Shown: one piece after another, positions 20,801 through 46,250 of the stretch
Layout of the letters: each line of letters begins with the position of its first letter
Numbering within the stretch: position 1 is the first letter of the stretch
NCBI GenBank assembly: GCA_965649765.1
Contig: OZ287758.1
Coordinates: 39,990,001-40,054,000 of the forward strand
Direction of reading: 5' to 3'
DNA length: 64,000 nt
Source of the DNA: Bispira polyomma
Lineage: Eukaryota
Made by a program: the position numbers and the translations under genes
The notes under the pieces: generated by a model
The model's database searches: none
Told to the model about the DNA's origin: nothing
Seen by the model: only the letters and a program-made list of their open reading frames with translations

Positions 20801-22844
20801 TGAGGCTGTACTGTATTTTATACCACTGTACCTATCTATTAAAATCTCTCTATTTTGTACTACAGCTAAGCTGGCCAAGGCTGGGTTTATGTGTCTGATA
20901 ATAGTATGTGTATTACTCTTCTGCTTCCTGTTGTTTGTCATCATTCTGTGGATGTCACATAGAAGAAACAAAAGGCATGCCAACAACAGAGGTAAGTCAT
21001 TTAATAATAGCATGTTTCCATACACACGTGTAAAAGTCCATCCGTGTACCCTCCTGTATGCACCTAAAAATCTTTGGCTCCTTATCTTTTTCTTCGTAGT
21101 GTTTCCATGGGTCTTTGTACATCATGCGTATCCAGTCTTGGAACCGACAGATTGTCAACGGCAGATAACTACGCTTTACAGCCAATTGTTCTGGTTCTAA
21201 TAAAATGTCTTAGCTTACAAACATGGCTTTCGTAGGGGTTTTCACACAGTCAACAACTGATTTATTTTCCACCAAGGGCCAGTAGAATTAGTCAGCCTAA
21301 GCTGTTGGAAATGACAAAAAAACTAAATTCTCATTCTACTCAGACGAAGAAGGGAGATTTTGGTCCTATGAGAACAGTCATGTAGTTGTAGGTTTTCAAT
21401 TGTATTTTTGTAAAAAAAGTGGGCTGTCACAAAAGTGTCAGAGGGTTTCTTGATATTTAAATTAAATTAATAATGTTATATAGGTGATAAGCTCCCCTCA
21501 AATTTCTGACCCACAAAGGTCATATGCAAAGTAAGCATTTCACCGAAACTTTGTGAGTATCTTAATATGTTACCAAAAGCAATACCACTAGTAGTACTAC
21601 TATATATTATATTTATTATAGTGACAAGTGTTTTGGTTGACACTCACACACTTAGTATCACACACCATTTTTAACGCATTTAAAAAGTTTCTTTGCATAA
21701 CAAATAAAAATTAGAATGCTAGAAATAATTGTATACATATGGTGTTTTTTTATTCTTTTTAAACACAGGGTCTTGCAGACTAACCAATGAGTTGTCTGTA
21801 AAGTACACTGGATTAGAAAAGAAATCAGCTAAATTTGCTACAGGTAAAATTTAAGTTGAATTTAATTAGTGCTTTTGGAGTGATTTTACTATTTTCGGCC
21901 AATTTACTAAGATGCATCTTCAGAAGCTATTTACTTAAGGGCGTTTTTGTAATGTTCGACCATATTGGATTTAACAGGAAATTACCTAGTTCTTTATTTT
22001 TCAAGATAATAGAAATAAGTAAATTATCTCTCACTAGATACTGCTATTACTGTGGCCAAAGCTCTTCAGAGTAACTGTCTTGACTATTGTAATTCCCTTC
22101 TGTTTGGAACTAATAAGTCACACATAAACAAGTTGAAGTCCATTCAAAACTATCTATGTAAAGTCATCTTTCGTTTGGGAATCCGTACTGATGCAACTCC
22201 ATACCTCCAGCAACTCCATTGGCTTCCAATTCACTATCGAATCCTGTTCAAAATGCACGTAACTACCTTTAAAGCAGTTGTCTCCCAACAGCCTCACTAC
22301 TAACTCTCCTTCAGCAGCCTTAAAAGGGTAAAGAGACTCTCTGTTTCCTCTAAAAAAACCACTAAGAGAGTCCTTCTTGGTCGCCGCTCCTATGCAATGG
22401 AAAAGCCTTCCAGTTAAACTTAGAATGCTTGAAACACTTTCTGGATTTCTGAAAAAACTCAAAACATATATCTTCAGGCTCGCCTTTCCTCTGTAGTCCT
22501 CTCCCCAGGTGGTAATGTATCCATCCTTATGACCTGGCTATTGCTTATTGATTTTTCTATTGGCTAATTGATTCTAATATTGTGCCTTAAAAAGATGCTT
22601 AGCATCAATAAGGCGCGTTAAAAATATACAATACAATAAGGAATAAAACAATAAAGTAGTTAAATAGGACACTGGTGTCTACCAAGTTGCATCCACTAGT
22701 CCCTAGGCCCAAGAGCTTCCGGATAATACAGTTCCTATGAAGTGAATTTGTTCCATTCTAAACTATCCCCTAAGGTGTCTGTATAACTAAGACCTACTTC
22801 TTTTTACAGATAATGATTACGAAACCATCAAGGAAGTACTTTAA
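14842..22844 (+). CDS. IgR-1: single V-type Ig-domain type I membrane receptor with ITIM. Exons: leader 14842-14863 or 15373-15433; V 15843-16184; stalk 16805-16909, 18730-18834, 19359-19493; TM 20866-20991; cytoplasmic 21769-21843 and 22810-22844 (stop)
   Basis: All internal exons are AG/GT bounded and phase 1-1. V-set motifs ELPC, REWAR and SMVISQVQLSDAGLYMC; hydrophobic TM followed by RRNKRH; tail motifs VKYTGL and NDYETI. Confidence 0.85.
15843..16184 (+). CDS. IgR-1 V-type Ig exon
   Basis: CAAATAG| acceptor and CTGG|GTAAGT donor; B-strand Cys, C-strand Trp, DxGxYxC. Confidence 0.92.
16560..19295 (-). mobile_element. Three CORE-type tRNA-SINE copies (~16560-16740, 18360-18665, 19055-19295), one upstream of each stalk exon
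   Basis: Minus strand CTCCGTGG(C/T)C(T/C)AGC A box, GGTTCGATTC-like B box and a GTACCCTTGGACAAGG...GGTGTATAAATAGGTACC CORE-like segment. Confidence 0.7.
17016..17320. mobile_element. MITE (hAT-like termini)
   Basis: Termini CAGGGGAGTAGC / GCTACGCCCCTG; absent from the paralogous stalk repeat near 18925. Confidence 0.75.
20866..20991 (+). CDS. IgR-1 transmembrane exon
   Basis: SKLAKAGFMCLIIVCVLLFCFLLFVIILWMSHRRNKRHANNR; TACAG| acceptor and |GTAAGT donor. Confidence 0.9.
21769..21843 (+). CDS. IgR-1 ITIM exon
   Basis: 75 nt, phase 1-1, strong polypyrimidine tract; reads GSCRLTNELSVKYTGLEKKSAKFAT. Confidence 0.75.
22066..22635 (+). mobile_element. L2-like LINE 3' fragment
   Basis: LDYCNSLL...LHWLPI motifs; 3' end GATGCTTAGCATCAATAAGGCGCGTTAAAAAT. 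Confidence 0.85.
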
Positions 22845-42500: not shown

Positions 42501-45021
42501 TGTTTCCATGGGTCCGTATACAACATGCGTATCCGTGATGCTCCATTTTCATGGGTCCGTGTACACAATGCGTATCTATGGTGCTCCGTTTCCATGGGTT
42601 CTCTCTGTACATCAGGCATATCCGTGATTCTCCGTTTCCATGGGTGCGTGTACACAATGCGTATCTGTGATGCTCCATTTCCATGTGTCCATGTACATAT
42701 TGCACATCTGCAGAAAAGGCAATCTGGTAATGGACAGATTGTCAACAACAGATGACTGACGCTTCACAGCCGATTGTTTTCGTTCCATGCATGTGATTTT
42801 CTAGGCACATTGTCCTCAGATTAAAATGTCTCAGCTTACAGACATGACTTTCATGGGGTTTTCACACAACTAATTTATTCACCACTAAGGGGCAGTAGAA
42901 TTAAGCAGTGCGTGTCGACTAATAGCTGAATGTGTCGAGTATATGTGAAACATTTAAAAGCTAAGAAACTAATCAAATCAGTGTTTACTGTCCGGTATAT
43001 CGGCTGTTGGCTATAGGCTACATAGGCTATGTTTCCAAAGCTTTGGTCCCTAGATATTATATTTGTCATGGATGGGGTCACGATGTAACCCTTTTATTCA
43101 ATTGAGCAAATAGGTAAGGTAAGGAGAAGGTAATATTTTGTCACTAGTATTATTGTGTTAAAAACCAGCTCAAAAACTACAGACCGGTGTCAAACCTCAG
43201 CTTCGTCTCAAAAGTCATCGAGAAAGCTGTAGCTAAACAAATTTCTGACCACCTTAATAGACAAAACATTGAAAATCTCCATCAGTCTGCTTATAGAAAG
43301 TTTCACTCTACAGAAAGTGCCCTTTTTTCAATTAGCAATGATATCAATCTTGCACTGGACCGCAACGACACAGTGGCCCTCACCCTTCTGGATCTCTCAG
43401 CTGCATTCGACACTATCGATCATGTCCTGCTCTGCGACACTCTCAAGCAGTGGTTCGGTATAAATGGCAGTGTCCTTAAATGGATCAGATCCTACCTTAC
43501 TCTTAGGGCACAAAGAATTAAACTAGATGATCACCTATCATCTTCCATGAAACTTCCATATAGAGTACCCCAAGGATCCGTCCTTGGTCCTCTACTTTTC
43601 ACCCTTTATACACATCCTCTTAGCACTGTCATCAATAAACACAATATAAAACACCACATGTATGCAGACGACACTCAAGTCTATCTCTCCCTCAATCCAC
43701 AAAATGCAGATACTAACATAGACCTACTTGCAGACTGTCTGTCTGATGTCCAGGCGTGGATGAACTACTCCAAACTAAAGCTTAACCCTGACAAAACAGA
43801 ATTCATCCTCATAGGAAACAAGAAAAACAGTGAACTCCTAAAATCTTTGTTTCCCATCTCCCTGCTGGGAAAAGACATACTACCTTCCGAAAATGCTAAA
43901 AACCTGGGTGTCACTTTTGATTCAGCTTTTTCGTTCGATACTCATGTTGCCAACATCTGTCGCTCCTACTATTACCACATACGTGACATCAAAAGAATCA
44001 GAAACCACTTGTCCATGGACACAGCCATAACTGTGGCAAATGCCCTTGTGAGTAGCCGCCTCGACTACTGCAATTCTCTCTTGTACGAAGCAAACAAGTC
44101 AAACATTAAAAAGCTCCAGTCCATCCAAAACTACCTATGTAGGGTCATTTTTCGCCTGGGTTGTCACACAGACGTCACTCCTTACCTCAAAAAATTACAC
44201 TGGTTGCCCATTAAATCTCGAATTTTGTTTAAGATTCACGTTACCACTTTTAAGGCTGTAGTCACTCAACAGCCACCCTACCTTGCCTCCCTTCTTTCCT
44301 TCAGTAACCGCAAGAGAGGCAACAGACTCTCTGTCACTTCGGTCAGACCAATCAGAAAGGCGGGTTTAAGAGCATTCTCCACTGCAGCTCCACGGTTATG
44401 GAACAGTCTCCCAGTTGACCTCAGATCAGTTGATACACTTGTCAGTTTTAGGAAAAAGCTTAAAACCTATCTTTTTAATCTTGCCTACCCACCTTAGCTT
44501 TCCTCGTGCACGCTCCCACTTCCTTCCTTACGACTTTGCAATTTCCATGGACTTAATGATTGGACTAATGATTCTGCTGTTGCGCTTTAGAAGATGCCTA
44601 GCATCAATAAAGCGCGTTAAAAATCTATAATAATAATAATAATAATAACTAGTGTAAAGTTTGATTGAAATAAGGATAGCCCATTATAATCAAGTAGTCA
44701 GTAAAAGTAATTCTTATATTTAAAACATTTAAAATTTAGCTTATCTGTTTCCATATTCCTTTTTATACATTACATCTTACAAACATGTGGATAATAGATT
44801 CTTCTTCTAAGTTACATAGTCTACACTTTGCATTATGCGAGATATTGATTTGTTTCAGAAAACGTTGAAATCCTGGACCATGTGTTAGGATACTGTTTTG
44901 AAGCCAAATAATACGATTATCTATCACATTTCTAAAACAAGTTCCACATGCAAACTTCCAACTATCTATATCAATATTAGGATTCAAATCTGTATTTCAT
45001 TTGTCATTACAGAACACTTTT

Positions 45022-45073
<52 letters not shown>

Positions 45074-46250
45074 GTGTGTAACAAGGAATGAAACAATACA
45101 GTAGTTGAATATGGTACTGGTGTTGGTTTATACCGAGTTGCTAGTCCCCGAGACCAAGAGCTTCCAGATAAAACAATACCCATTAAGTAGAAATAAAAAG
45201 AGGTTGTCTTTGTGTTAGATAGGTAAATTGGCCTTATATATAATTTATTGTATCTATATATTTCGACCTTCTTATGGATTTAAGGTCTCATCAGAGGCTG
45301 AGGTATATTGTCACTGACTCCTTAAGGTATCAAATTTGGATCCGACAAGCTCCTGCTCCTTAAGGTGCATTATTTGGCTCCGGCAAGCTCCTGCAATACA
45401 GTTTATGGCTATATGCTGGATATTGATTTTTGTGATCCAAAACCTATAATTTATGCTATAGTGTGGATTCCCAGTAGGTAGTGGAAATATGTTTTGACCT
45501 TAAGATTAAGTAGATTTGTCCTGTTATAAAACTCTCCCAAGGTGTCTGTATAACCAAGCTCTACTTCTCCTTACAGATAATGTTTATGAAGAAGTTCAAG
45601 ATGGATCAGAAAGAACACCAGAATCAGTGGTAAGTATTTATTTATATTAATTTTTTGTTTCAGCTTTGGTCATATTTTGACGGCCATTATTAGTGGTGGG
45701 TGAAACCGGTGCCGAAGCATTGTAAACCACCGACCTACAGCAAGAACCTGATGAACTTTCTCACATAAAGAAAAAATCTGTGGAACCCCCCCCCCCCCCT
45801 CTATCACCCTTAACCCCCCACTTTCTCTTTAGAGTCAAGACAAAGATCATTTATTCTTACTTTAAACACATTGTATGGCTGATAGCATGTTTCCCCTACA
45901 TAGACTCAGCACAGAGACATTTATTGTTACCTTAAACACATTGTATGGCTTAGAGCATGTTCCCCTTGTATATTTTTGTAAACAAATATCTAATGGCTAT
46001 TTTAGTTTGGATTTAACCTTACTTTAACTATGTTAACACATCTTGCACCATCAACCTCCAGTAAATGTATTGTCAACTTTCCAAAAATACATCACCGACA
46101 GCAATGGTGAAAGGCGAATGTGATATTACTATATCCCCCCCAGATAAGGTAGAAAGCTTATTTGAAGCATTGAAAACATTTTTTCATGAATGAAAGCCAG
46201 TTCATATTGATTGTGATAATTTTAAATTGTATTTATAATTCCAGGCATGA
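36229..46250 (+). CDS. IgR-2: paralogous V-type Ig receptor lacking the ITIM exon. Exons: putative leader 36229-36250; V 38188-38538; stalk 41170-41274; TM 41746-41880; cytoplasmic 45577-45629 and 46245-46250
   Basis: Exons homologous to IgR-1, open and phase-compatible; tail reads DNVYEEVQDGSERTPESVA*. The leader exon is the least certain part. Confidence 0.78.
37655..37862 (-). mobile_element. tRNA-derived SINE
   Basis: Minus strand TGGTCTAGTGG A box and GGTTCAAGTCC B box; body matches a + strand fragment at 15597-15720. Confidence 0.8.
38188..38538 (+). CDS. IgR-2 V-type Ig exon
   Basis: ELSC, REWAR, SLVFSQVQLSDAGLYMC; AG/GT bounded; 351 nt. Confidence 0.92.
39449..39531. repeat. (TA)n microsatellite
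   Basis: Perfect TA run; shorter runs at ~18254, 45026-45070 and 62997-63048. Confidence 0.98.
39683..41070 (-). mobile_element. Interrupted L2-like LINE fragments
   Basis: Minus-strand 3' end (CTTAGCATCAATTAGGCGCGTTAAAAATC) at ~39690 and ICRSCYLYIGDLKKITKHLSHQTAIVIANALISNRLTYCN at ~40790-40920. Confidence 0.75.
41990..42710 (+). repeat. ~43-bp minisatellite, about 16 units
   Basis: GTTTCCATGGGTCTGTGTACATCATGCGTATCTGTGATGCTCC repeated. Confidence 0.95.
43160..44650 (+). mobile_element. 5'-truncated L2-like LINE with an uninterrupted RT frame (43187-44497)
   Basis: NYRPVSNL, QSAYR, LLDLSAAFDT, VPQGSVLGP, YADDTQ and LNPDKTE motifs; short 3' UTR and (TAA)n tail. Confidence 0.95.
44700..45020 (-). 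mobile_element. L1/Tx1-like LINE C-terminal fragment
   Basis: CRLCNLEEESIIHMFVRC CCHC-type motif. Confidence 0.6.
45192..45504 (-). mobile_element. ~313-bp ribozyme-bearing insertion (retrozyme / Penelope-associated non-autonomous type)
   Basis: Flanked by direct repeat ATTAAGTAGA (45182-45191 and 45505-45514); absent from the paralogous intron at ~22740; contains a hammerhead. Confidence 0.8.
45231..45298 (-). ncRNA. Type I hammerhead ribozyme
   Basis: Minus strand: GCCU-CUGAUGA-GACCUU(aaauccauaag)AAGGUC-GAAA-UAUAUA(gauacaauaaau)UAUAUA-UA-AGGC. All core nucleotides and three stems are present. Confidence 0.9.

What the first reader, a model, noticed from the sequence alone, without database searches (positions are those of the whole stretch)
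45182..45514. Hammerhead ribozyme in a ~313-bp TSD-flanked insertion (retrozyme-like) within an IgR-2 intron
Seen: an intact type I core (CUGAUGA, GAAA, UA) with stems of 4, 6 and 6-7 bp on the minus strand and predicted cleavage after AUA between 45235 and 45234; a 10-bp TSD ATTAAGTAGA; an empty site in the paralog (~22740); and an internal 38-bp duplication (CTCCTTAAGGT...CAAGCTCCTG at 45318 and 45356). Known: metazoan type I hammerheads occur in Penelope-like elements and in small non-LTR retrozymes that yield circular RNAs. Inference: a non-coding element mobilised in trans after the duplication. It is antisense to the host gene, so it should not cut the pre-mRNA.
Basis: partly seen in the sequence, partly recalled or inferred. 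Interest (0 to 1): 0.8.

Follow-up and report, generated by a model that had tools for sequence, protein, structure and literature searches.

The report
Truncated Penelope-like retroelement carrying a hammerhead
The 313-bp insert is the broken-off tail end of a Penelope-like jumping gene, a class already known to carry a hammerhead ribozyme there, so it is a real but ordinary example; related copies suggest the ribozyme does cut in the animal.

Summary
On the minus strand there is an intact type I hammerhead (45298-45231), with helices of 4, 6 and 8 bp and a predicted cut between 45235 and 45234. It sits in a 313-bp insert flanked by a 10-bp target duplication. The paralogous intron lacks the insert, and the 38-bp internal duplication is present.

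The insert is not a complete retrozyme. It is a 5'-truncated copy of the 3' end of a Penelope-like element (PLE) family. Longer copies carry remnants of reverse transcriptase, a CX5CxxC linker, a GIY-YIG endonuclease and a downstream C2H2 zinc-finger ORF. The hammerhead follows, then a roughly 44-nt tail. Other copies show variable duplications (9-15 bp), different truncation points, partial tandems and inverted arms, all typical of PLEs.

At least five sequence families share this hammerhead type: 291 exact pattern matches genome-wide and none in controls, with compensatory changes in helix II. In a sister family, insertions that are not tandem begin at the base after the predicted cut, which suggests cleavage in vivo. 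Rfam models do not reach threshold, probably because helix III is long.

No RNA runs were available. This scan had already noted the same PLE family elsewhere in this genome. Verdict: a new member of a known kind, of modest interest.

The parts
45182..45191 (.). left copy of the 10-bp target-site duplication ATTAAGTAGA
45192..45504 (-). 313-bp insertion: 5'-truncated 3' end of a Penelope-like element family; its sense strand is the window's minus strand
   Evidence: 49 genomic matches. Other copies continue upstream in the sense direction. The truncation lies at reference position about 608 of a 924-bp derivative.
45505..45514 (.). right copy of the target-site duplication
45231..45298 (-). 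type I hammerhead ribozyme motif: helix I 4 bp, helix II 6 bp, helix III 8 bp, intact core
   Evidence: the hammerhead fold lies within 0.6 kcal/mol of the MFE. It is conserved in 25 distinct copies.
45234..45235 (-). predicted self-cleavage site: after A17 (45235) and before A1.1 (45234). Most other copies have C17.
45192..45234 (-). 43-nt tail between the cut site and the 3' end of the element. The same sequence heads full-length units.
   Evidence: PLE tail as described in PMC8557442 and PMC11167929
45318..45393 (.). two 38-bp tandem units inside the element's 3' UTR (31/38 identical)
   Evidence: the unit number varies between copies
22737..22746 (.). empty target site in the paralogous intron

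Best explanation
The insert is a dead-on-arrival, 5'-truncated copy of the 3' end of an endonuclease-positive Penelope-like element (PLE), or of one of its protein-less deletion derivatives. It was inserted by target-primed reverse transcription into an intron, after the host gene duplicated.

The hammerhead is the family's own ribozyme. In the parent element it lies about 44 nt before the 3' end, inside the region that becomes the pseudo-LTR when units sit in tandem. In multi-unit transcripts it most likely cuts after position 17. The unit RNA then starts with the tail sequence, and reverse transcription starts at the end of the next tail, which explains why the tail appears at both ends of a full unit.

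The window copy keeps an intact core. It could cut an antisense read-through transcript once, but it cannot make a circle or move again.

Shown: the motif, the duplication, the empty site, the truncation, the family relationship, conservation and covariation of the ribozyme, and unit 5' ends at the cut site in relatives. Inferred: catalysis itself, the order of RNA processing and priming, and which active element supplied the enzymes.
For: Family and truncation:
- The insert has 49 genomic matches, and other copies extend upstream in the sense direction.
- Independent truncated copies have different 5' end points and duplications of 10, 15, 10, about 12 and 9 bp.

PLE identity of longer copies:
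- An RT fragment with an FIDD motif runs on into a CX5CxxC linker and a GIY-YIG domain.
- The protein atlas places these pieces among HTH_animal/RVT_1 and GIY-YIG clusters, with scores of 0.96-0.97.
- The roughly 924-bp derivative is assembled from the end of the EN gene, the sequence after it, and the last roughly 517 bp of the long element.
- Partial tandems, inverted 5'-truncated arms and a tail are present, as described for PLEs in PMC8557442.

Ribozyme:
- The hammerhead is one of only two conserved islands in about 1.2 kb of otherwise diverged 3' UTR between two families.
- Across 25 distinct copies, 92% of cells pair, against 26-45% when the partners are slid.
- Helix II differs between families while mostly staying paired.
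- A 3-nt deletion subfamily gains a 7-bp helix II.
- There are 291 exact pattern matches and 0 in reversed-pattern controls.

Unit 5' ends:
- In family 2, the junctions that are not tandem start at position 0 or +1 after the predicted cut in 5 loci. The others lie at +2/+3, +4, +10 and +17, and none lies upstream of the cut.
- The family 1 copy L033 starts at the cut site and is flanked by a 9-bp duplication.
Against: - No Rfam hammerhead model reaches its threshold.
- No RNA run was available, so neither cleavage nor expression was seen.
- The Pfam hits for RT and GIY-YIG are below the curated cut-offs, and the long family 1 copies are decayed.
- Two family 1 junctions lie 12 and 24 nt upstream of the cut site, so uncleaved templates are also used or those copies were rearranged.
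- Helix I has only 4 bp and helix III is all A-U/G-U, so activity may be low.
- The window copy has A17 where most copies have C17.
- A transcription start at the same base would also explain the 5' ends.
Confidence: 0.87

Rival explanations
1. The insert is a complete animal non-LTR retrozyme unit that is transcribed, self-cleaved and circularised into a roughly 300-nt RNA, which is then copied back into DNA by a PLE.
For: It has a type I hammerhead, is non-coding and is flanked by a duplication. Animal retrozymes are proposed to be PLE derivatives (bioRxiv 10.64898/2026.07.22.740005; PMC7229834). Tandem arrays of hammerhead units exist in this genome.
Against: Other copies run on upstream for 170 bp to several kb from the insert's 5' edge, so 313 bp is a truncation and not a unit. 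It has a single hammerhead and no tandem partner here. The tandem arrays have units of 1.0-2.1 kb, not 170-400 bp.
Confidence: 0.05
2. The hammerhead-like motif is a conserved piece of the element's 3' UTR with another role, such as an RT binding site, and does not cleave.
For: Rfam models do not reach threshold. Helix I is short. PMC11167929 reports that hammerhead mutants did not affect insertion in vitro for an Anolis PLE, and that no RNA-seq reads ended at the cut site.
Against: All core positions are invariant or nearly so across families, while loops and helix II sequences change with pairing kept. Unit 5' ends pile up exactly at the predicted cut.
Confidence: 0.06
3. It is a SINE or MITE unrelated to PLEs that carries the motif by chance.
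For: It is small, dispersed, non-coding and flanked by a duplication.
Against: There are no tRNA, 5S or 7SL matches, no poly(A) or microsatellite tail, and no terminal inverted repeats. The duplications vary in length. The sequence is continuous with RT/GIY-YIG-bearing copies.
Confidence: 0.02

Closest known systems
Hammerhead ribozymes in the pseudo-LTRs of EN+ Penelope-like elements (Cervera and de la Pena 2014, PMC4209133; Craig et al. 2021, PMC8557442)
   Same: A type I motif near the 3' end of an RT/GIY-YIG element. Helix I is short (4-5 bp) and helix II rather long. Copies form partial tandems and inverted 5'-truncated arms, carry a short tail, and have variable duplications.
   Different: Most metazoan PLE hammerheads are described as minimal, with little or no helix III, and are thought to act as dimers. 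This one has an 8-bp A-U-rich helix III with a 10-13-nt loop, so it could fold as a monomer. The family also carries a C2H2 zinc-finger ORF between the EN gene and the ribozyme. The tail is 43-44 nt (63 nt in the sister family) against the reported 30-40 bp.
Animal non-LTR retrozymes (Cervera and de la Pena 2020, PMC7229834; Li et al. 2026 preprint)
   Same: Non-coding, type I hammerhead, likely PLE-dependent, with duplications longer than 4 bp.
   Different: Retrozymes are 170-400-bp units in tandem that yield circular RNAs. The window insert is a single truncated fragment, and the tandem derivatives in this genome have units of 1.0-2.1 kb.
Poseidon PLE of Anolis carolinensis (Frangieh et al. 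2024, PMC11167929)
   Same: Tandem units, internal start of reverse transcription that leaves a tail, and a hammerhead at the pLTR-ORF junction.
   Different: There the cut site lies inside the ORF start, and no reads or insertions ending at the cut site were found. Here the cut lies 44-63 nt before the unit's 3' end, and unit 5' ends coincide with it.

Membership tests
Hammerhead ribozyme, type I | Conserved core: C3 U4 G5 A6 N7 G8 A9, G12 A13 A14, A15.1-U16.1, H17 | tested here: met
   H17 = A in the window and C in most copies
Hammerhead ribozyme, type I | Three helices around the core, with helix I open and helices II and III capped by loops | tested here: met
   Helices of 4, 6 and 8 bp. 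The fold is within 0.5-1 kcal/mol of the MFE in the three family-1 copies tested and 3.7 kcal/mol above it in the family-2 copy L047.
Hammerhead ribozyme, type I | Match to an Rfam hammerhead covariance model at its gathering score | tested here: not met
   The whole-genome RF00163 search was uninformative because only 73 of 99183 candidates were scored.
Hammerhead ribozyme, type I | Helices supported by compensatory change | tested here: met
   The third pair of helix II is C-G, U-A or A-U in three families. Two further families have a mismatch there but 7-8-bp helices with different sequences. One helix III pair changes from G-U to U-A. The independent events are few.
Hammerhead ribozyme, type I | Self-cleavage at the predicted bond | not testable with these tools
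   Only indirect evidence: unit 5' ends at the cut site. No RNA runs were available.
Penelope-like element (EN+) | [quoted passage not shown] | tested here: met
   Met in longer relatives, not in the window copy. The Pfam scores are below the curated cut-offs; the atlas scores are 0.96-0.97.
Penelope-like element (EN+) | Partial tandems forming pseudo-LTRs, inverted 5'-truncated arms, and a short tail | tested here: met
   description in PMC8557442
Penelope-like element (EN+) | Hammerhead within the pLTR near the 3' end | tested here: met
Animal non-LTR retrozyme | Small (170-400 bp) units in tandem, each with a type I hammerhead | tested here: not met
   The window copy is single and truncated. 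Arrays elsewhere have periods of 1.0-2.1 kb.
Animal non-LTR retrozyme | Expressed as circular RNA | not testable with these tools
   No RNA runs were found.
SINE | Pol III head derived from tRNA, 5S or 7SL, and a LINE-type tail | tested here: not met
   No such Rfam matches. The 3' end is shared with the PLE.

The most novel reading that the evidence does not exclude
In this PLE lineage the hammerhead cuts in vivo, and its cut sets the 5' end of the RNA that is reverse-transcribed. Unit-length and head-to-head insertions begin at the base after position 17, while the 3' end lies one tail further on. This would be direct genomic footprint evidence for a role of the ribozyme in EN+ PLEs, which recent papers still call unclear (PMC8557442) or not required in vitro (PMC11167929).
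Probability: 0.5. Interest if true: 0.6.

Novelty: new member of a known kind. Interest (0 to 1): 0.35.

Why it matters
For the window itself it matters little. It is one more truncated retroelement fragment in an intron, antisense to the gene, possibly still segregating as present or absent.

For the class it is a useful data set. The genome holds several related PLE families with a monomer-type hammerhead, many young copies, and tandem arrays of protein-less derivatives. Insertion 5' ends map to the predicted cleavage site.

That makes the open question of what the ribozyme does for EN+ PLEs testable in this species, using simple RNA end mapping and cleavage assays.

Tried and rejected
- Rfam at gathering and at E-value thresholds, on the window, on the region and on ten related loci, gave no hammerhead family above noise. 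RF00163 over the whole genome was uninformative because few candidates were scored.
- I first suspected that a 2.8-kb tandem repeat sharing the tail (L031) was the autonomous partner. It has no long ORF.
- SINE and MITE readings were rejected (see the rival explanations).
- The search for RNA runs found none. The three runs that hold the sequence are contigs of unknown library type, so expression, read starts and circles could not be examined.
I did not try another route. Later surveys used only the 80-letter text that pattern searches print.
- A further independent family 1 full-length 5' end (C5:77462555-77463004) could therefore not be read.
- Family 1 gave only ten 5' junctions, all already seen.

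Full report
**Observation**

The minus strand of 45298-45231 reads as a textbook type I hammerhead:
- Helix I: GCCU paired with AGGC.
- Core: CUGAUGA.
- Helix II: 6 bp with an 11-nt loop.
- GAAA.
- Helix III: 8 bp, A-U-rich, with a 10-nt loop.
- U16.1 at 45236 and A17 at 45235, so the cut would fall between 45235 and 45234.

My descriptor scan finds this one site in the window. Simulated 64-kb sequences of the same dinucleotide make-up gave 0.002 sites with looser limits and none as strict as the observed one. The hammerhead fold is within 0.6 kcal/mol of the minimum-energy fold.

The 10-bp duplication ATTAAGTAGA brackets 313 bp (45192-45504). The paralogous intron aligns on both sides and lacks the insert, and the 38-bp internal duplication is real. 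Rfam does not recognise the motif. Nothing reaches gathering scores, and the only trace is RAGATH-1-hammerhead at 19 bits.

**What the insert is**

The insert has 49 matches in its own genome. When these are aligned with their flanks, the end next to the ribozyme is a fixed terminus. At the other end, most copies run on into shared sequence. The window copy is therefore truncated at its 5' end in the ribozyme's sense.

Independent truncated copies stop at different points and carry duplications of different lengths:

| Copy | Target duplication |
|---|---|
| window | 10 bp |
| L014 | 15 bp |
| L015 | 10 bp |
| L029 | 11-13 bp |
| L002 | 12 bp |
| L033 | 9 bp |

Several of these contain a CTTAA-like core. 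Variable truncation and variable duplications are the signature of target-primed reverse transcription.

**The parent element**

An older subfamily extends 2.5-3 kb upstream. Its open frames include:
- a reverse-transcriptase fragment with an FIDD motif;
- a piece that continues into a CX5CxxC linker and a GIY-YIG domain;
- further downstream, a C2H2 zinc-finger ORF.

The Pfam scores are weak. The protein atlas, however, places the two enzyme pieces among HTH_animal/RVT_1 and GIY-YIG clusters at 0.96-0.97. RT followed by a GIY-YIG endonuclease defines EN+ Penelope-like elements (PMC8557442).

The younger subfamily to which the window copy belongs is a deletion derivative of roughly 924 bp. It is made of the end of the EN gene, the stretch after it, and the last roughly 517 bp of the long element. 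Copies occur as partial tandems and with inverted 5'-truncated arms. The 43-44 nt between the cut site and the 3' end also head the next unit. This matches the published PLE layout of pseudo-LTRs, inverted arms and a tail.

**Is the ribozyme functional?**

A sister PLE family (L047, L048) has about 37% protein identity in the zinc-finger ORF and the same gene order. It has a homologous hammerhead, which is one of only two conserved islands in about 1.2 kb of 3' UTR.

On 25 distinct copies the proposed pairs hold in 92% of cells, against 26-45% when the partners are slid. Two pairs change on both sides.

Pattern searches that fix only the core, the first two pairs of helix II and the start of helix III gave 291 matches and none in reversed controls. 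They reveal at least five helix II versions:

| Family | 5' strand / 3' strand | Note |
|---|---|---|
| 1 | GACCUU / AAGGUC | |
| 2 | GAUCU / AGAUC | |
| 3 | GAAC / GUUC | |
| 4 | GAUAAUC / GAUUUUC | U-U at the third position |
| 5 | GAACAACU / AGUUGAUC | A-A at the third position |

A family 1 subfamily with a 3-nt deletion gains a 7-bp helix II. The core never varies between families. This is the pattern expected of a selected ribozyme, although the number of independent changes is small.

**A footprint of cleavage**

In family 2, I listed the 96 nt upstream of the unit's 5' region for 97 sites. About 80 have a complete hammerhead upstream, meaning they are tandem units, many in arrays with periods near 1670, 2065 and 2079 bp.

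The sites that are not tandem begin as follows, counting from the base after the predicted cut:
- Position 0 on both arms of a perfect head-to-head junction (C2:2818509).
- Position 0 (C2:94046964, C9:39021821).
- Position 0 or +1 (C5:42918202).
- Positions 0 and +1 (C8:18551772).
- Positions +2 and +3 (C5:53855654).
- Position +4 (C3:37380720).
- Position +10 (C5:22880465).
- Position +17 (C3:40281936).

None begins in the 30 nt upstream of the cut. In family 1, the copy L033 starts at the cut site and is bracketed by a 9-bp duplication. Four other family 1 junctions lie at -24, -12, +5 and +8.

The simplest reading is that many templates have a physical 5' end at the cleavage site. A transcription start at the same base is the alternative, and sequence alone cannot exclude it.

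The literature retrieved here treats the role of the hammerhead in EN+ PLEs as unresolved (PMC8557442). For an Anolis element it reports no reads ending at the cut site and no need for cleavage in vitro (PMC11167929).

**The window copy itself**

It keeps every core base but has A17 where most copies have C17. It lies antisense to the host gene as far as I can judge. A transmembrane-like frame at about 41.8 kb and the splice signals are on the + strand, so it would not cut the pre-mRNA.

With one ribozyme and no tandem partner, it could at most cut an antisense read-through transcript once.

Contigs of public runs from the same species include one that bridges the filled right junction. They also include one, in two runs, that joins 45141 to 45514 with 52 other letters in between. 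That is what an empty allele would look like, so the insertion may still be polymorphic. I could not read the 52 letters, so this is not proven.

**Comparison and novelty**

This is a member of a known kind: hammerheads in PLE pseudo-LTRs have been known since 2014 (PMC4209133). It differs in three ways:
- The long helix III departs from the minimal, dimer-dependent metazoan PLE motifs described there. It probably also explains the Rfam miss.
- The family has an extra zinc-finger ORF.
- The tail is longer than reported.

The retrozyme label fits the genome's 1.0-2.1-kb tandem derivatives better than it fits this fragment.

Earlier notes of this scan on other parts of the same genome describe the same PLE family, with its zinc-finger gene and its inverted-arm insertions. 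I reached the same structure independently before reading them.

**Limits**

- No RNA data were available.
- The long family 1 copies are decayed.
- I built no consensus and repaired no frame.

Noticed in passing
L047:1393-2367 (+), L048:925-2148 (-); decayed in L033:7782-8877: A 325-417-aa ORF with a C2H2 zinc finger lies between the GIY-YIG gene and the hammerhead in two PLE families. About 18 genomic copies show a 417-aa open frame without stops. An extra 3' gene is unusual for PLEs.
   Followed up: partly
G000 C6:738675-762325; C9:46436134-46455143; C13:2183684-2205487; C5:18755303-18761535; C10:43295805-43303092: Tandem arrays of family 2 hammerhead units with periods of about 2079, 1670, 1670, 2065 and 2084 bp. 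These units are too short to hold the enzyme gene. Some arrays meet head to head. They are candidates for large retrozyme-like circular RNAs.
   Followed up: no
G000 C13:2190362-2203817: In eight of the ten units listed across this stretch of one array, the base after the cut is G instead of A. This turns the first helix I pair from U-A into U-G and keeps it paired.
   Followed up: no
L032:8822-8890 and L047:2899-2967: This is the second conserved island (71 nt, 79% identity) in the otherwise diverged 3' UTR of the two PLE families, about 210 nt upstream of the hammerhead. Its function is unknown; it may be a protein-binding or promoter element.
   Followed up: no
window 43187-44497 (+): A 436-aa ORF with a strong RVT_1 match (106 bits) lies in the same intron, from an unrelated LINE-type element.
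   Followed up: partly
window 45012-45084: A (TA)n microsatellite about 100 bp from the insertion produces spurious microRNA-like Rfam hits.
   Followed up: no
L031 (G000 C5:68409000-68418999): A tandem repeat with a 2801-bp period contains the tail, the first roughly 57 nt of the unit and the 177-bp end of the EN gene. It has no hammerhead core and no long ORF.
   Followed up: partly
target duplications of window, L014, L015, L029: Four independent duplications contain a CTTAA or TTAA core, and the window's truncation point shares CTTAA with its target. This suggests a target preference and microhomology at the 5' join.
   Followed up: no
window 45141-45514, runs X2 and X3: A 226-nt contig joins the two flanks of the insert with 52 other letters in between, while another contig in X1 bridges the filled junction. 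This may be a present/absent polymorphism.
   Followed up: partly
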